Source: Anaeramoeba ignava BMAN
Taxonomy: Eukaryota > Protista > Anaeramoebae
Reading direction: 5' to 3'
Assembly (NCBI GenBank): GCA_028826165.1
Contig: JAPDFW010000091.1
Span: 62,001-126,000, forward strand
Length of the DNA: 64,000 bases
Translations under genes and position numbers: made by a program
The notes under the pieces: generated by a model
Told to the model about the DNA's origin: nothing
What the model saw: only the letters and a program-made list of their open reading frames with translations
The model's database searches: none
Shown here: positions 15,100-36,100 of the stretch, in pieces
How the letters are laid out: the number at the start of each line of letters is the position of its first letter
Numbering within the stretch: the first letter of the stretch is position 1

Positions 15100-15160
15100 C
15101 GAATAAAATTTTGAAAAAAATGAAAAATGAAAAATGAAAAAAGAAAAATGAAAAATTTTT

Positions 15161-23959: not shown

Positions 23960-26900
23960 TTAATTTTCTTTATCTTTATCTTTTTCTTTTTCTTTTTCAT
24001 CATCATTATCACTTTGTTTTTCTTTCTCATCATCTAAAAATAAAAATAAAAAATAAAAAATTAATTTAAAATTTTTAAATGAATTTTTAAATGAATTTTT
24101 ACTATCAGATTCAATTTGAGGAACAGGAGGTAAAGGAGGTAAAGGAGCACTTCGTATTGATTTTGAAGGATCAAGATTTGATAAAGAAGATTTTTGGATA
24201 TTTTCTTCTTCTTTCAAGTTGACATAATCAGGGATCATTTGGAAATCATTAAGAAGCTTAAGAGAGGATTTATGGATAAGACTTGAATCAGCACCTTCAA
24301 GCTCTTCATAATCAGGGGAAATTTGAGGGGTTTGAACTGAATGGAAGTTGCGATTTGCATAGAAATTAGCCTTTTCTTTAAGCTCTTTGATTTTCTTCTT
24401 AGTTGATTTGGCCTCTTTTTTAGACATTGAAGAAAGCATTTGTTCAATATCTGATTTAGGCCATTGAAAACGGAACAATTTTGTGTTGTTTTTCAAGCTC
24501 CAAACAAACTCCTGCAAATTTGAAAAAGTGGAGCAATTGTTGTCGAAGAAAACGAGCTGGAGATTGCAGGCATCCTGGGACAGCATGTTGGTAAGCTCTT
24601 TGAGCGCATCGAGACCGCAACGGTTTCCTGAGATATCGAGCGCAAGAAGGTTCGTGTTTTTCTGCAGTTTTGCAAGAAGATCCTGGATGTTTTTTGCGAG
24701 ATGAAATTTGTCGTTTCCTCGCATACGGAAATACCGAAGGTTTTTCATCTCCGAGAGCTGGGAAAGCGGCTCGGAAATTTTCGCGACGTCTTTTCCCTTT
24801 GCGATGTTTCTTGACAGGGAGAGTCGCTCTATTGATTTGTTGCTTAAGAACCCGTCCAGTCCGCACAGTGCGATTAATCCGTCGGTTCTAATTTTACAGT
24901 CATCGAGAATAAGCTCCTGAAGGGCTGCGGAGTCTCTGTTTTTCATAAGAACCCGAGTGATTGATTTTGCGCCCGGAATCCCTAAATCGTTGTTTGTTAA
25001 ATTGAGCGTGAATTGCAACAACTTTTCGTTGCCCAAAACCGCGTCCACTATGTCTCCTGCCATTTCCCCGATGATTTTTGTGCGCGCGAGATCGAGCAAA
25101 CGCAGTGTCTTGCTTGTTTGAATCATCTTCACTACGCAATCATCTTTTTTCTTTGCAAGAACATCATTATCAGCAAGATTCAAATACTTCAACTTTGATT
25201 CCGACAGAAATTCCGTTATTGTTTCCGTTACAACCTTCATTTCCAATCCAGTGTTTGCCAGATTGAGAAATTCGATCGGATTGTTTTCTTTTGTTGATTC
25301 GATCCACTTTTTAAACGCTTGTGATCCTTGTTTGGAAAACACATTGTTCGACAAATTTAGATAAATCAATTTCCCCTTTCCGCCGCTTTTGGCGAGTGCG
25401 TTGAACAGGCTTGAGATCCCTTTCGGTCCCAGTTGGCAGAACGACAGATCAAGGTGTGTTAGTTTACTGCTCATTTCTTCTATTCCTTTGGAAAGACTTG
25501 ACATCATCACTTTGTCGGGAATTTTGTTGACTGACAAATCCATATATTCCACAGCTATATTCTTGTTCTTTTGCAGTGCGTTTCCGAGTTCATCGAATCC
25601 TTCTGCTGTTTCCAGTCCGCTTATTGTTACTTTCCTTATTGTTGTGTTTTCTGTGAATGTCTCGCTGAAAATCTTCAGAAAATCTGGTCGATCCGAGTTA
25701 AAAATTGTGAATTGTGTGAAGTGGTAATCATTGCGTAATGCGTCTCGAATTGCGTTGATTTGATTGTCGTCTGCTTTGATCTTGTCTAATGCCTTGAAGT
25801 TTGTTAAGTCGAAGTTGTATTTTTTTGATAAATCTTCGCTTAGAAATAATTCTTTTTCAACGTAATCAATGAATTCTTGATTTTTGTTTGTTAAGTGGTA
25901 TCTGCAATAAGCTTCGTATCTGTTTACAAATGCGTCGCTTGAAGTCATTGCTTTTTTAATTTAATTAACAAAATTTTATAAAAGAATTTTATAAATGAAT
26001 TTTATAAATGAATTTTAATTTTAATTTTATAAATGAATTTTATAAATGAATTTTATAAATGAATTTTAATTTTAATTTTAATTTTAATTTTAATTTTATA
26101 AATGAATTTTAATTTTGATTTTATAAATAAATTTTAATTTTGATTTTTAATTTTAATTTTAATTTTAATTTTAATTTTAATTTTAATTTTAATTATAATT
26201 TTAATTTTAATTTTAATTTTAATTTTAATTTTAATTATAATTTTAATTTTAATTTTAATTTTAATTTTAATTTTAATTTTAATTTTAATTTTAATTTTAA
26301 TTTTATAAATGAATTTTAATTTTAATTTTATAAATGAATTTTAATTTTAATATTAATTTTAATTTGAATTTTAATTTTAATTTTAATTATAATTTTAATT
26401 TTAATTTTAATTTTAATTTTAATTTTAATTTTAATTTTAATTTTAATTTTAATTTTAATTTTAATTTTAATTTTAATTTTAATTTTAATTTTAATTTTAA
26501 TTTTAATTTTAATTTTATAAATGAATTTTAATTTTAATTTTAATTTTTAATTTTTAATTTTAATTTTAATTTTATAAATGAATTTTAATTTGAATTTGAA
26601 TTTTTAAATATATTTTTGATTACCTGGCACTTGGAATGGAACAATTCTAAATAAAAATATAATTAAAAATAAAAATAAATTTAAAATGATTAATAAATTA
26701 AATTATTATTGATCTTCTTAAATTTTTCTTTTTGATTCCAAATTAATGTGCAATTTACCTTCCTTCAGGTTGACAAATAAATTTTGCTTTTTTTTCTTCA
26801 GGAAAACCTTGAACAATTTTCATATATTTTGACTCTATCAAACGATAAATATTATCAGCTTCAACTGATTCTAATTCAACTTCAAAAGAATCAAAAGTAA

Positions 26901-27267
26901 TTTTTAACTAAAAGAAAAAGAAAAAAGAAAAAGAAACAAATTTTTTAATTTTAATTTTAATTTTAATTTTATATTTAATTTTAATTTTTTGATTTTTTGA
27001 TCAAATTAAAACCTTTTTTTCTCCAGAACTTTCAACTTTTTTAATATTATATAAATGAGCCGTTTGTAAAATTTTCTTTTTAATTCCATTCTTTGTTCCA
27101 GGAATTACAATAAAATGAAAATTAGAAACAACAAATAATCTATCTTCTTTCTTTTTCTTTGTTTTTTGTATTTGAAACCAACATAAAGTCATAATCACTC
27201 CATAATTTTCAACTAATGCTTGTGCTGTTGTTCTATCTTGTTCTGTAACTTCTCGAAAATCTCCCAT
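23960..27267 (-). CDS. CARMIL/LRRC16-like protein (PH-like + leucine-rich repeats + Pro-rich tail), 5 exons including a 23-nt microexon (26624-26646)
   Basis: N-terminal KKKKEDRLFVVSNF PH-like segment, FVNRYEAYCRY linker, RI-type LRRs (LTHLDLSFCQL, LIYLNLSNN, LLALDISGNRCG, FFDNN), and APLPPLPPVP. GT-AG junctions keep frame. Confidence 0.85.
25975..26605. repeat. (AATTTT)n microsatellite in a CARMIL intron
   Basis: Visible tandem hexamers; they produce the spurious NFNF ORF. Confidence 0.9.
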
Positions 27268-27424
27268 TTTTTATTATTATTTGTTTTTTAATTAAATTTT
27301 TCTTTTTCTTTTTGAAAAATTTTTTTTTTTTTTGATTTTTGTTTTTTAAATTTTTATTTTTAATTTAAAAATAAAATAATTTTTTTTTTGCTTTTTTTTT
27401 TTTAATTAAAAATAAAACAATAAA

Positions 27425-29555
27425 AAATTAATAAAAATTAAAAATAAATAATAAATTAATCTTATTTTAAATATTTATTTAAGATTATTTTATTTAAATA
27501 AATTAAAATTAATCAAAAATAAAAATAAAAAATTAATTAATAAAAAGTGGAATTAATTTTATTTCCAAATTTATTTACAAAATAAAATAAATAAAAATTA
27601 AAAATAAATAATAAATTAATCTTATTTTAAATATTTATTTAAGATTATTTTATTTAAATAAATTAAAATTAATTAAAAATATAAATAAAAAATTAATTAA
27701 TAAAAAGTGGAATTAATTTTATTTCTAAATTTATTTCCAAAATAAAATTAATTAAAATTAAAAATAAATAATAAATTAATCTTATTTTAAATATTTATTT
27801 AAGATTATTTTATCTAAATAAATTAAAATTAATCTAAAATATAAATAAAAAATTAATTAATAAAAAGTGGAATTAATTTTATTTCCAAATTTATTTACAA
27901 TAAAAATAAATAAAAATTAAAAATAAATAATAAATTAATCTTATTTTAAATATTTATTTAAGATTATTTTATTTAAATTAATTAAAATTAATTAAAAATA
28001 AAAATAAAAAATTAATTAATAAAAAGTGGAATTAATTTTATTTCCAAATTTATTTACAAAATAAAATAAATAAAAATTAATAATAAATAATAAATTAATC
28101 TTATTTTAAATATTTATTTAAGATTATTTTATTTAAAATAAATTAAAATTAATAATAAATAAAAATAAAAATTAATTAATAAAAAGTGGAATTAATTTTA
28201 TTTCTAAATTTATTTACAATAAAAATTAATTAAAATTAAAAATAAATAATAAATTAATCTTATTTTAAAAATTTATTTAAAATTATTTTATCTAAATAAA
28301 TTAAAATTAATCTAAAATATAAATAAAAATTAATTAATAAAAAGTGGAATTAATTTTATTTCTAAATTTATTTCCAAAATAAAATAAATAAAAATTAATA
28401 ATAAATAATAAATTAATCTTATTTTAAATATTTATTTAAAATTATTTTATCTAAATAAATTAAAATTAATTAAAAATAAAAATAAAAATTAATTAATAAA
28501 AAGTGGAATTAATTTTATTTCCAAATTTATTTCCAAAATAAAATCAATAAAAATTAAAAAATAAATAATAAATTAATCTTATTTTAAATATTTATTTAAG
28601 ATTATTTTATTTAAATTAATTAAAATTAATTAAAAATATAAATAAAAATTAATTAATAAAAAGTGGAATTAATTTTATTTCCAAATTTATTTACAAAATA
28701 AAATAAATAAAAATTAAAAATAAATAATAAATTAATCTTATTTTAAATATTTATTTAAGATTATTTTATTTAAATAAATTAAAATTAATTAAAAATATAA
28801 TTAAAAATTAATTAATAAAAAGTGGAATTAATTTTATTTCCAAATTTATTTACAATAAAAATAAATTAAAATTAAAAATAAATAATAAATTAATCTTATT
28901 TTTAAATATTTAAGATTATTTTATTTAAATAAATTAAAATTAATTAAAAATATAAATAAAAATTAATTAATAAAAGTGGAATTAATTTTATTTCTAAATT
29001 TATTTCCAAAATAAAATAAATTAAAATTAAAAATAAATAATAAATTAATCTCATTTTAAATATTTATTTAAGATTATTTTATCTAAATAAATTAAAATTA
29101 ATCTAAAATATAAATAAAAATTAATTAATAAAAAGTGGAATTAATTTTATTTCCAAATTTATTTCCAAAAATAAAATAAATAAAAATTAAAAATAAATAA
29201 TAAATTAATCTTATTTTAAATATTTATTTAAAATTATTTTATTTAAATAAATTAAAATTAATCTAAAATATAAATAAAAAATTAATTAATAAAAAGTGGA
29301 ATTAATTTTATTTCCAAATTTATTTACAAAATAAAATAAATAAAAATTAAAAATAAATAATAAATTAATCTCATTTTAAATATTTATTTAAGATTATTTT
29401 ATTTAAATAAATTAAAATTAATTAAAAATATAAATAAAAAATTAATTAATAAAAAGTGGAATTAATTTTATTTCTAAATTTATTTCCAAAATAAAATTAA
29501 TAAAAATTAAAAATAAATAATAAATTAATCTTATTTTAAATATTTATTTAAGATT
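27425..29555. repeat. Intergenic satellite, unit about 160 bp, about 13 copies, each with one AAAAGTGGAATT core
   Basis: TAAAAAGTGG at 27541, 27701, 27861 and onward to about 29450. Confidence 0.92.
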
Positions 29556-29576
29556 TAAAACTTTATTTAAATAAAC

Positions 29577-31437
29577 TTAAAACTTAAATTCATTCAAAAT
29601 TTTCTCATCTTCTTTTGTATCACTAGATTTAATTTCAAATTCTTTCAACTTCTCAATAATAACCTTAATCTTTTCATCAACAAATTCAGATATTAACCCT
29701 CTCTCTTTTAATACAGAATATTCAAATTCATCAACAACCTTCTTCGATCCATCATTTAAAACAATCATATCAATTTCAAGATCACAATAAGAAATATAAG
29801 AAAAACCAACAAAAATTGGAAGTGAAATATTGCAATATCCACATTTAAAATTCCCTGATTTATCACAATATCTATGAATAGAAACCCAAGATCCATAGCA
29901 AAAACTATAAATATCAAAATCTCCTTTTTCAATCCCTATTCAAATAATTATAAATATTTTTTTATATTTTGATTTTGATTTTGATTTCGAATTTATACTG
30001 TATTTCTCAGTTTGATAATCTTCAAATCCATCATAATATTGAATATTTTCCTGAACTTCCCATCTCCCTTCGAATAACATAAAACCGATTTTCATGATTC
30101 TTTTTAATTAAGGTTCCTCTTTTCAATTCAATAGCAAAATTTGTCCCGATTTTATAGTGATAAATTTGACAATCATCTCTTCCAAAAACTACATTCTCAA
30201 AATAATAATCCAAAAGCAAATCAGACATTTTTTCCTTTTCCTTTTCTGAAAGCTTATCTTTTGTTGAGATGAAATCAAGAAAATCAAGTTGAGGAGAAAA
30301 TTCAATAGGTCGAATTAAGTGATGATTTGGTGATGTTGGAAGCACTTTTCTTCTTTGTTCATCCAATATTCGTTTGCATTCTGTTGATAAATACATATTC
30401 ATAGAATGAAATCCTTGCGAAAGTAGCACATGTCCATAAAGCTTATTCTTATCATTTTGGATTTGATTATCATTTTCGAAATAACACGTGGTAATTCCAC
30501 TTTTATTTGCATTTTCCAAATAAAGAAAAAAAACACGAAGAAGCTCTGTTGATATGCCTATTTCCTGCAAGATCTCTGTTGAATTAGCTTCTGGATTAAG
30601 AACATAAAGCAGAGTTTTTGGTGGAATTTGGATTTGCTGGCTTTGCAAAAGAGGAAGCAAAAAATTGTCAATCCAATCTTTTTCCACTTCTTGTTTTTGG
30701 TTGACTAATATATTCACTCTGTTTTGAAGAGGAGTCTTTTCATCCATTTCTGGGCAATAAACCAAATAGCAACTCCATGTTTGATATCCATAATTAAATA
30801 AAGTGTTTTGATCCATCTTGCATTCAATTTGATCGCTTAATTTGTTTCTTTTTGACACAATTTGGAACAAGTAATATTTCCCAATTTCAACATCTTCTCT
30901 GCTTGTGGCCCAATTTCCAAATGTAAAAGAACCCAAATTCACAGTATAAGTTTTAACTTGTGCTTTTTCATCTTTTTTCTTTTTGACAATTTGAACACTT
31001 TCAACTTTGCCAAGCAAAATTGTTCCTTTATTCAATTCAATTGCACCCGAAATTGAAGGTATTGATTTTCTCAAGCTTACAAACAAATTCTGAAGATGGG
31101 TCTGTGTTCCTTGCGCTGTAAATCCCAATGAGGCAGAATTTTCTGAAATATCTTGAATTGTTAAATTGGGTTGATTCATTGGTTTTCGAATTGTTGGAAA
31201 TCGATTTCTTTGTTCTGACGATAAAAACATTTGTTGGTAATCTTGATTTAAAATTTGGATCAAAGCTGTTGAATATCTTCCTTTAGGAAAAAGAGAAACT
31301 GTCTTTTTTTAAATAAGAGAAAAAAAATCAAAATGATAAAAAAATTTTTCATTTATTATTCTCATTTATTTCGATTATTTTTTTACTGTTGGATCGTTTA
31401 TAGTTTGGATTAAATTCTCAAAAGAAAAAAATTGCAT
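29577..31437 (-). CDS. fau-1: FAU-1-like ribonuclease (archaeal AU-binding RNase; RNase E/G-like N-terminal half + DUF402 C-terminal domain), 3 exons, about 570 aa, one +1 frameshift near 30046
   Basis: Exons 31437-31387, 31302-29999 and 29935-29577 (1714 nt; 1713 = 571 codons after removing one base). Motifs KGRYSTALIQIL, CKRILDEQRRKVLPTSPNHHLI, YHYKIG, IRREMGSSG..YYDGF, EKGDF, SWVSIHRY, YCNISLP, YCDLEIDM, VVDEFE and GLISE correspond in order to FAU-1 motifs RGIYSTALTKLL, KxxLDExRxxVxPTxxGHH, HxKPDG, RRxxxxGxYDGL, EGD, YYNINTP, YVDLEVDV, IIDxEEL and GxISEEL. Confidence 0.8.
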
Positions 31438-31573
31438 GATTTAAATTAATTTTTTAAAAAGGAAAAAATGAAAAAAATTTTTTTGAAAAATTTTTTATTT
31501 TCATAAATTCAAAATTCAAAATTCTTAATTTAATTTAATTTAAATTTAATTTAATTTAATTTAAAAATTCTTT

Positions 31574-33112: not shown

Positions 33113-36100
33113 TTATTTTTTTTTGAATTTTTGAAGGAAATTTTGGATTTGTTTTTTTAATTCTAAATTTGGAATAAGATTTGTTGAAGATAATTTCATT
33201 TCTTTATAAACAGGACTTGTATCATGATTTTTAAACCATTTCAATATTGCATTTCTTTCATAAGTTCTTCCATCATCAGCAATTACAGGATCATTCATAA
33301 TTTGGTTAGTTAACGGACAAATAAAATTTTGAGGAATTTTTTCGTCAATTTGAAGAAAATCTTCTGGAAATTGAATCGAAAATTGATTATCAAAATGTGC
33401 GGTTGAATTAAATGGCTGTATTAAATTTGGAGGAACTTCAATTTGATCATCAGTTGAAATGAAGGCTTCTTTATTATAAGCATAAGGATTATATCGCCAA
33501 TTTTTGGAAAAAAGATAATGATTAAAATCGCCTTCAAATGTTTTTGTTCCGTAAGGATTTGATCTTTTAATATTTAAATTCAAGATTAAATTTGGATTTT
33601 GATTTTGATTTTGATTTAAATTTAAATCTAAATTTTGATTTTGATTTTGATTTTGATTTTGATTTGGATTTGGATTTAAATTTTCCAAATCCATGATTTT
33701 TGATAATTTTTCCTTCTTTTTTGCAAAAAAAATATCATCTTCATTTTTGGTTAATTCTTTGAATTGATCAAATTCTCTTAATTTATGAATAATTTTTATT
33801 CTTAAACCTAATGATGTTATTCCCAATGCAGCCAAATTAAAATTATCCATATAAATCAAGTCTTTTCCCGAAATTCTTGCATCTTGGAAAATAAGAATCA
33901 AATCATCAAGTCCAATTAATTTAAGGAACATGATTGAATTTTCTTGATTCCAAGAAGAAATGGGTTTTTTTCGAAGTTCGGCTTCATTTTGAGTGATTCT
34001 TTTGCTTTTAAATTGCAATTCGCAATTGTCGTCATCCCAAATATATTCTTCAAGTGAATCATGTTCACATTTTTCTGGATTAATTAGCAATACAAAAGGC
34101 GGACATGAAAATCGAGCCTGAAGAATAACTCGACAGGACTCTTCCGCTATGCTTTTGGGTATTACATAAGGTGGTATTTTTGATCCTCTCTTCCGAATCT
34201 CAATCAACTCTTGTAATTTCTTTTCCTGTGTTTCCAATCTAAAATCATCAAAAATTGGTCTTTCTTTTTCTATTATTTTTTTTTCTTCCACAATTGAATC
34301 TAAATTTCCCATTTCAAAATTTACAATTCTAACAATATTTAAATTATCATGTGGATAAAATTTTGCAGTTGGATCGTTTTTCATTCCGTTTGTCCAGTAT
34401 GAAACGTATATATCATTATTTGCATGGAAATATATTCCTTCTGCTGATTTTGTATCCTCTCTCCAACTTCCTTGATATCGGTCTCTATCAATTTTAAAAT
34501 TATTTAAAATTTAAAATGAATTTGATTTGAATATTTTTTATTAATTTTAAAATGAATTTGATTTGAATATTTTTTAATAATTTTAAAATGAATTTGATTT
34601 GAATAATTTTTAATATAAATTTGATTTGAATATTTTTTAATAATTTTAAAATGAATTTGATTTGAATATTTTTTAAAATGAATTTAAATATTTGATTTGA
34701 ATATTTGATTTGAATATTTTTTAAAATGAATTTAAATAATTTTTAATATAAATTTGGAATATTTGATTTAAATATTTAATTTGAATAATTTTAAAATGAA
34801 TTTAAATATTTTTTAATAATTTTAAAATGAATTTGATTTGAATATTTGATTTGGAATATTTGATTTGAATATTTAATTTTAAAATGAATTTGAATATTTA
34901 ATTTGAATATTTGATTTGAATATTTTTTAATAATTTTAAAATGAATTTAAATATTTGATTTGAATATTTTTTAATAATTTTAAAGTGGATTTGAAATATT
35001 TGATTTGAAATATTTGATTTGAATATTTGATTTGAAATATTTGATTTGAATATTTGATTTGGAATATTTGATTTGAATATTTAATTTGAATATTTTTTAA
35101 AATGAATTTAAATATTTTTTAATAATTTTAAAATGAATTTGAATATTTTATTTGAATATTTAATTTGAATATTTGATTTGAATATTTTTTAATAATTTTA
35201 AAATGAATTTGAATATTTGATTTAAATATTTAATTTGAATATTTAATTTGAATATTTGATTTGAATATTTAATTTGAATATTTAATTTGAATATTTGATT
35301 TGAATATTTGATTTGAATATTTGATTTAAATATTTGATTTGAATATTTGATTTAAATATTTTTTAATAATTTTAAAATGAATTTGAATATTTAATTTAAA
35401 TATTTAATTTGAATATTTAATTTGAATATTTGATTTGAATATTTTTTAATAATTTTAAAGTGGATTTGATTTGAATATTTGATTTGAATATTTAATTTTA
35501 AAATGGATTTGGAATATTTGATTTGAATATTTAATTTGAATAATTTTTAATAATTTTAAAATGGATTTGGAATATTTGATTTAAATATTTAATTTCAAAC
35601 CCTGTTGCATAATAATAATCTCCAGTTCCATCTTTTAAATCATATCTCCAATCCCCTAAAAATTTTTTAAATAAAGAAATTTAAAAAACTTTTTTATTAA
35701 AAATTTAAATATTAAAAATTAATTTTTATAATACCTTTATAAATATCTCCTTCAGCAAAATGATATATTCCAAATCCATGTCTTTGATTACGATGCCTTA
35801 AATAAAAATGTAAATATATATAAATAAAAATATAAAGTAAAATTAATTTTTGGATTATTTTTAATTTTGAATGATTTTTGGATTATTTTTGATTTACCAA
35901 TGCCCTAAATATTGACTTCCATTATCTGCATAATAAAACATTCCTCTTTAAAATACAAAATCAAAATCAAAATCAAAATCAAAACTTAATTTGTTTTTGT
36001 TTGATTAATTAAAAAATTTTTAATTTTTTTTAATTACATTCCTTCTTTTTCTCCATTATACCAATCTCCATAATACCAATCTCCATTTCTATAAATATAA

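What the first reader, a model, noticed from the sequence alone, without database searches (positions are those of the whole stretch)
29577..31437. Archaeal-type FAU-1 ribonuclease gene with spliceosomal introns in a eukaryote
Seen: three GT-AG exons (the ORF track splits them) assemble into an ORF of about 570 aa carrying FAU-1 motifs in order from the N-terminal KGRYSTALIQIL through LDEQRRKVLPTSPNHH and RREM..YYDG to a DUF402 domain (YCNISLP / YCDLEIDM / VVDEFE) with its acidic metal-ligand-type residues intact. Known: full-length FAU-1 is an archaeal AU-rich-RNA-binding RNase implicated in 5S rRNA processing in Thermococcales; stand-alone DUF402 proteins (Ntdp, FomD) are bacterial. Inference: the two introns, host-like composition and host Inr-like motif (31456-31474) argue against contamination. 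This would be either an archaea-to-protist transfer or an archaeal relic lost in most eukaryotes, possibly giving this AU-saturated transcriptome an undescribed RNA-processing activity. I know of no characterised eukaryotic FAU-1.
Basis: partly seen in the sequence, partly recalled or inferred. Interest (0 to 1): 0.88.

Follow-up and report, generated by a model that had tools for sequence, protein, structure and literature searches.

The report
Archaeal RNase W gene in eukaryotes
The amoeba Anaeramoeba ignava has a spliced, expressed gene for RNase W (FAU-1), an RNA-cutting enzyme so far described only in archaea; its cutting site is intact, its 5'-end sensor is worn away, and a distant alga carries a related but apparently inactive copy.

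Summary
A single-copy, three-exon gene (minus strand, 31437-29577) of Anaeramoeba ignava encodes a 570-aa homologue of archaeal FAU-1, renamed RNase W in 2024 and described as archaea-specific. Transcript-type contigs skip both introns. All four public runs lack one base at 30046-30050, so the frameshift is an assembly error; NCBI's 536-aa model loses 34 residues there. An archaeal profile matches the N-terminal, S1, helical and DUF402 parts. All nine catalytic, metal and main RNA-binding residues checked in the DUF402 cleft are kept except T378. The 5'-phosphate sensor residues and R10 are not recognisable. New here: a second eukaryotic homologue in the glaucophyte Cyanophora paradoxa, which has lost the metal ligands. 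The two eukaryotic proteins share a 27-residue S1 loop (10-18 in 186 archaea) and are each other's best match there, which points to one eukaryotic lineage. Trees cannot place it; descent from Heimdallarchaeia is not rejected. Most likely an active, 5'-end-independent nuclease for AU-rich single-stranded RNA; substrate unknown. Its range in eukaryotes is poorly sampled.

The parts
31463..31475 (-). Host Inr-like core-promoter motif (TTTTTCATTTTTT), 25 nt before the ATG
   Evidence: 11 copies in the window vs 2.4 expected; each lies shortly before an ATG; function not tested
31387..31437 (-). Exon 1, 17 codons (N-terminal extension)
   Evidence: X3 contig 17 covers 31387-31442 joined to exon 2; same start in NCBI model P0001
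31303..31386 (-). Intron 1, 84 nt, GT-AG, phase 0
   Evidence: skipped in X3 contig 17, kept in X1/X2
29999..31302 (-). Exon 2: N-terminal domain, S1 domain with a 27-residue loop, diverged 5'-sensor region, helical bundle with the PT.P.HH motif, and the first strands of DUF402 (H-x-K, R, YDG)
   Evidence: archaeal profile 80.9 bits in two stretches; hhalign 99.8%; AF2 pLDDT high at 1-150 and 290-417
30046..30050 (-). One surplus base in the assembly (false frameshift)
   Evidence: one base left out in all four runs
29936..29998 (-). Intron 2, 63 nt, GT-AG, phase 1
   Evidence: joint 'skips 63, CT..AC' in X3 and X4
29577..29935 (-). Exon 3: C-terminal half of DUF402 with the metal ligands (N404, D420, D424, D437 equivalents), and the stop codon
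   Evidence: PF04167 E 9e-13; 8wo8/8rza E 2e-12; archaeal profile 68.9 bits

Best explanation
An expressed, single-copy nuclear gene for a eukaryotic variant of RNase W. Shown: gene structure, splicing, open frame, homology, and conserved active-site residues. Inferred mechanism, by analogy to P. furiosus RNase W: single-stranded RNA lies along the S1 and central domains and enters the DUF402 cleft. There two Mg2+ ions, held by the equivalents of N404, D420, D424, D437 and D364 (N487, D503, D507, D520, D441 in the corrected protein), act with H326/K328 (H399/K401) to cut the backbone, probably at UA steps in AU-rich RNA. R10 and the 5'-phosphate pocket are gone, and R10D/R12D mutants of the archaeal enzyme are hyperactive, so the protein probably no longer needs a 5'-monophosphate end and is aimed by S1 or by a partner protein. 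The likeliest substrates are AU-rich pre-rRNA spacers (about 0.35) or general AU-rich RNA turnover (about 0.3), as an accessory to the complete eukaryotic nuclease set. Origin: one acquisition shared with Cyanophora (about 0.8). Within that, inheritance from the archaeal ancestor with wide loss is somewhat more likely than one transfer followed by eukaryote-to-eukaryote spread.
For: Splicing and frame. Single copy. Eukaryotic neighbours: LRR, SAM/U-box and weak MIT matches. Profile matches. ESM Atlas's own features and model give FAU-1 clusters first (scores 0.81-0.87, a lead only). Residue mapping from 8rza numbering; these columns are 88-99% conserved in 194 archaeal proteins. Hyperactive R10D/R12D mutant. 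UA preference. Shared eukaryotic origin: exon-2 residues 51-155 score 91 against Cyanophora (z 16) and at most 57 against 195 archaea; the S1 loop is 27 residues in both, 10-18 in 186 archaea; the pair joins at 94/88 under LG+G4. RNase W is in 69 of 121 Asgard genomes, Heimdallarchaeum included.
Against: No activity data. T378 is replaced by Tyr. The Cyanophora copy lost its metal ligands, so a non-catalytic role is possible in eukaryotes. The host keeps Nob1, two Fcf1-family genes, Las1, XRN and RNase MRP, so there is no obvious gap to fill, and the archaeal substrate (opened circular pre-16S) has no known eukaryotic counterpart (my knowledge). The eukaryotic join is between two long branches; each sequence alone goes elsewhere without support, and a shared-rare-residue count did not single out the pair (6, against up to 8-11 with archaea). 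No A. flamelloides homologue appeared. About 4% of Anaeramoeba genes are putative transfers. The AF2 models used archaeal rows, so their match to 8rza is not independent.
Confidence: 0.6

Rival explanations
1. Independent archaeon-to-protist transfers. Anaeramoeba took the gene from a sediment archaeon; Cyanophora took another separately; their resemblance is convergence or long-branch attraction.
For: High transfer load of Anaeramoeba, archaeal donors included. Not seen in A. flamelloides. The two sequences fall apart in some trees. The rare-residue test is neutral. The middle region is not detectably alike between them (z -0.6).
Against: Same-length S1 insertion and an 80-residue gap-free match that no archaeon approaches, despite opposite base-composition bias. 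At most 32% identity to any archaeon in conserved columns and a very long branch, so not a recent transfer. Halobacteriota and several other phyla were not in my set.
Confidence: 0.2
2. Not an RNase in this host. It works as an RNA-binding scaffold, or as a nucleotide or 3'-phosphate hydrolase like bacterial Ntdp/FomD.
For: The DUF402 metal site is shared with Ntdp and FomD. The 5'-sensor residues are lost. The Cyanophora copy persists without catalytic residues.
Against: It keeps the RNase W-specific residues D364, H326, K328 and R355, plus H271/H272 and S1. NtdP and FomD models score 29 and 13 bits against cut-offs of 280 and 320. The archaeal enzyme showed no phosphatase activity.
Confidence: 0.17
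3. A pseudogene, or an archaeal contaminant in the assembly.
For: The assembly shows a frameshift; the genome comes from a mixed culture.
Against: The frameshift is absent from all four runs; both introns are spliced in transcript-type contigs, intron 2 in two studies; the differences are synonymous. The neighbours are eukaryotic, and GC3 of 0.15-0.23 is host-like.
Confidence: 0.02

Closest known systems
RNase W / FAU-1 (P. furiosus 8RZA, 8WO8; S. acidocaldarius 8RZF; PMC11602121, PMC5627344)
   Same: Domain order: N-terminal domain, S1, sensor position, helical bundle, DUF402. H271/H272 and the active-site residues H326, K328, R355, D364, Y391, N404, D420, D424, D437 are kept.
   Different: Eukaryotic nuclear gene with two spliceosomal introns; about 100 aa longer; R10 to F, R12 to K, T378 to Y; no sequence match in the 5'-sensor; 27-residue S1 loop; at most 32% identity in conserved columns.
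Cyanophora paradoxa EP00741_P006774 (tig00001041_g6551.t1, P0005, 538 aa), uncharacterised
   Same: Full-length RNase W layout (8rza E 5e-10); same S1 loop length; shared VLPT.P.HH and DFLDF motifs absent from the 195 archaeal proteins (patterns chosen after seeing the pair).
   Different: Keeps R10 and R12 but lacks N404, D420, D424 and D437: a probable pseudo-enzyme. No Pfam hit. Its genomic context could not be checked.
Stand-alone DUF402 phosphatases (Ntdp/SA1684, FomD, SC4828)
   Same: DUF402 barrel and three shared metal ligands.
   Different: Single-domain nucleotide hydrolases; far weaker match (E 0.086; below NCBIfam cut-offs); they lack the D364 loop arrangement.
RNase E/G (bacteria, plastids)
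   Same: S1 domain of similar fold (VIA Z 8.8).
   Different: No RNase E catalytic domain; no PF10150 match.

Membership tests
RNase W / FAU-1 | N-terminal (central) domain with G-x-Y-S-T-A-L, followed by an S1 domain | tested here: met
   profile positions 11-145 matched; hhalign 99.8%; pLDDT 71-97 over 1-150
RNase W / FAU-1 | 5'-sensor domain fold inserted after S1 | tested here: inconclusive
   hhalign probability 0.2%; pLDDT mostly under 50 at 152-288, but strand-helix-strand-helix order fits; the Cyanophora model shows the same order with higher confidence
RNase W / FAU-1 | 5'-phosphate pocket and switch residues (R10, K170, S172, R173, K174, R181, R201, T202) | tested here: not met
   R10 is F; no K-I-S-R-K or W-R-T motif; S172, R181 and R201 are 84-93% conserved in archaea. 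Some short archaeal forms of 319-378 aa also lack this region.
RNase W / FAU-1 | Helical bundle with H271/H272 | tested here: met
   PTSPNHH
RNase W / FAU-1 | C-terminal DUF402 with N404, D420, D424, D437, H326, K328, R355, Y391, T378 | tested here: met
   8 of 9 identical; T378 is Tyr
RNase W / FAU-1 | D364 of the beta5-beta6 loop (second Mg site, specific to RNase W) | tested here: met
   YYDG right after the corrected frameshift
RNase W / FAU-1 | RNase activity in DUF402; role in pre-rRNA maturation | not testable with these tools
   needs an assay
RNase W / FAU-1 | Confined to archaea | tested here: not met
   spliced nuclear gene; second eukaryotic homologue
Ntdp / FomD stand-alone DUF402 phosphatases | Single-domain protein reaching the family model cut-off | tested here: not met
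   29 vs 280 bits and 13 vs 320 bits; multi-domain protein
RNase E/G | RNase E catalytic domain, PF10150 match | tested here: not met
   no Pfam match; structure match limited to S1

The most novel reading that the evidence does not exclude
RNase W was inherited from the Asgard ancestor, was present in the last eukaryotic common ancestor as a pre-rRNA processing nuclease, and survives in a few scattered protists: active but 5'-end-independent in Anaeramoeba, as a pseudo-enzyme in Cyanophora. It would then be a lost link between archaeal and eukaryotic ribosome biogenesis, not an archaea-specific factor.
Probability: 0.3. Interest if true: 0.85.

Novelty: new variant of a known kind. Interest (0 to 1): 0.66.

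Why it matters
RNase W was proposed as the first archaea-specific ribosome biogenesis factor (PMC11602121). A spliced gene with an intact active site in a metamonad, and a related copy in a glaucophyte, removes that exclusivity. It may add a protein to the list that eukaryotes inherited from archaea and then mostly lost. The two copies are also a natural dissection of the enzyme: one kept the cutting site and lost the 5'-phosphate switch, the other kept the switch arginines and lost the metal ligands. That gives a direct test of the proposed autoinhibition model. The public protein model is wrong across the H-x-K and R catalytic residues, which hides the intact site.

Tried and rejected
Word-index protein searches returned only the gene's own model and missed even archaeal homologues, so they say nothing about absence. 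Metagenome scans: the eukaryote-specific patterns found no relative; the mixed patterns found 15 loci, all archaeal. The exhaustive search with exon 2 gave 4 other hits; P0003 is a spurious fibronectin-repeat protein. An alternative intron from GT at 30056 would also restore the frame but would drop YDG; the contigs show no such joint. Trees with the mixture model did not finish the careful search; placement among archaea is unresolved. The AU test rejects eukaryotes plus Thermococci (p 0.026) and does not reject eukaryotes plus Heimdallarchaeia (p 0.127) under LG+G4. Halobacteriota, Methanococci and Thermoplasmatota could not be reached. The idea that the gene replaces a missing eukaryotic nuclease was not supported. 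No mention of the gene or family in the text-held supplements of the genome paper (they may use other gene ids). As the operators asked, the spliced model was searched exon by exon and the joined, corrected protein was not submitted or built; full-length steps used NCBI's own model P0001.

Full report
Observation. On the minus strand the gene runs from an ATG at 31437 to a TAA at 29577. It has exons 31437-31387, 31302-29999 and 29935-29577, and GT-AG introns of 84 and 63 nt. The exons sum to 1714 nt, one base more than 571 codons. Four public runs were laid on the stretch. All four lack one base in 30046-30050, so the frameshift is an assembly error. Two runs are spliced: one contig of X3 skips both introns and one of X4 skips intron 2. 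X3 is a second sample from a second study. These are contigs, so they show presence of the spliced form, not its level. The two substitutions seen are synonymous. The organism is Anaeramoeba ignava; NCBI's model M0811_10587 (P0001, 536 aa) is 34 residues short across the error and loses the H-x-K and R catalytic residues. The gene is single-copy. Its neighbours encode LRR, SAM/U-box and weakly MIT-like proteins. An upstream TTTTTCATTTTTT motif is enriched in the window and lies shortly before ATGs. Contamination and pseudogene status are excluded.

Homology. Exon 3 matches PF04167 (E 9e-13). Its best solved relatives are the three FAU-1/RNase W structures (E 1.6e-12 to 4.6e-10), far ahead of bacterial Ntdp. 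Exon 2 has no library hit. A phmmer search over 1.84 billion representatives found an Asgard protein, a Thermoprotei protein and a Cyanophora paradoxa protein. A profile of 58 archaeal RNase W proteins, gathered, scores exon 2 at 80.9 bits over the N-terminal and S1 domains (positions 11-145) and over the helical bundle and first DUF402 strands (222-352). Profile-profile comparison gives 99.8%. The AlphaFold model of exon 2 is confident at 1-150 and 290-417 and aligns to 8RZA at Z 18.0, rmsd 3.7, 316 residues. Its alignment held archaeal rows, so this is not independent. The ESM Atlas, from the sequence alone, also lists FAU-1 clusters first, at lead-level scores.

Functional residues. FAU-1 was renamed RNase W, with the nuclease site in DUF402 (PMC11602121). 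By P. furiosus numbering the Anaeramoeba protein keeps H326, K328, R355, D364, Y391, N404, D420, D424, D437, and H271/H272. T378 is Tyr. D364 is the ligand that sets RNase W apart from DUF402 phosphatases. By contrast R10 is Phe and R12 is Lys. The 5'-sensor region (exon-2 residues about 156-285) shows none of the phosphate-pocket motifs and has no profile match (0.2%). It is poorly modelled, though its predicted strand and helix order fits the sensor fold. These residues are well conserved in archaea, but short archaeal forms without this region exist. A defining feature was tested and not met, so I file it as a variant of RNase W, not a plain member.

Mechanism (inferred). Single-stranded RNA is cut in the two-metal DUF402 cleft, probably at UA steps as for FAU-1 (PMC5627344). 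In the archaeal enzyme R10/R12 restrain activity until a 5'-phosphate is bound, and their mutation raises activity. Their loss here suggests an enzyme that does not read the 5' end. The host keeps Nob1, two Fcf1-family genes, Las1, several XRN genes and RNase MRP RNA, so the protein is an addition, not a replacement. Pre-rRNA spacers and general AU-rich RNA turnover are about equally likely substrates. A KKKK run in the S1 loop could be a nuclear signal; this is a guess.

A second eukaryote. The Cyanophora protein (538 aa) matches 8RZA by sequence (E 5e-10) and by model (Z 33.0, rmsd 4.2, 440 residues, same caveat on the alignment). It keeps R10, R12, H271 and H272 but lacks N404, D420, D424 and D437, so it is probably inactive. 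Its contig could not be fetched. Exon-2 residues 51-155 align to it without gaps over 80 residues, scoring 91 (z 16) against at most 57 for 195 archaeal proteins; the reverse search gives 91 against at most 80. Both have a 27-residue loop in S1 where 186 archaea have 10-18. Against a shared origin: their middle regions are not detectably alike, and a count of shared rare residues does not single them out.

Phylogeny. On 275 conserved columns the two eukaryotes join at 94/88 under LG+G4 and at 83-89 SH-aLRT in two quick mixture trees, but not in a third. Each alone falls elsewhere without support. Long-branch attraction cannot be excluded. RNase W is common in Asgard archaea (69 of 121 genomes), Heimdallarchaeum included. 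A clade of eukaryotes plus Heimdallarchaeia is not rejected (p 0.127); one with Thermococci is (p 0.026). My odds: inheritance from the eukaryotic common ancestor about 0.45; one transfer then eukaryote-to-eukaryote spread about 0.35; two independent transfers about 0.2. Anaeramoeba has many transferred genes, and no A. flamelloides homologue appeared.

Limits on novelty. Paper searches found no eukaryotic FAU-1 or RNase W, and the 2024 paper calls the family archaea-specific. The library lacks most subscription papers. UniRef already labels the protein as DUF402-containing. My one exhaustive search recovered only two of the many archaeal homologues, so more eukaryotic copies are probably missed; rarity among eukaryotes is not shown.

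Verdict. A real, expressed, probably active eukaryotic variant of an enzyme thought confined to archaea, with signs of a small eukaryotic subfamily. New variant of a known kind; interest 0.66.

Noticed in passing
window 27417-29587: A 160-bp AT-rich tandem array (13.6 copies, 94% matches) starts at the gene's stop codon and fills the whole 3' flank.
   Followed up: no
P0001 / NCBI KAJ5071103.1 (M0811_10587): The public model is 34 aa short, with several wrong-frame residues, because it was built around the one-base assembly error at 30046-30050.
   Followed up: yes
P0005 (Cyanophora paradoxa EP00741_P006774): Probable pseudo-enzyme of the RNase W family in a glaucophyte, with no Pfam annotation; context and expression not checked.
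   Followed up: partly
L163-L166, L169, L171-L173, L212, L216: Short archaeal RNase W forms (319-378 aa; Thermoproteota and metagenome contigs) match only the N-terminal domain and the C-terminal part, so they seem to lack S1 and the 5'-sensor.
   Followed up: partly
window 9088-44660: The motif TTTTTCATTTTTT, usually followed by (T/C)CTTTT, recurs 14-79 nt before ATGs on both strands, including a divergent pair at 15115/15158; a likely Anaeramoeba core-promoter element.
   Followed up: partly
G000:C2:716055-716341 (-): RNase MRP RNA gene (RF00030, 54.4 bits, above the cut-off).
   Followed up: no
G000 contigs C35, C55, C82, C95, C112: XRN_N matches at five loci, more than the usual two XRN genes.
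   Followed up: no
window 33113-34384 (-) and 23960-27267 (-): Neighbours: a SAM plus U-box protein, and an LRR protein that looks CARMIL-like (the family name is from memory).
   Followed up: no
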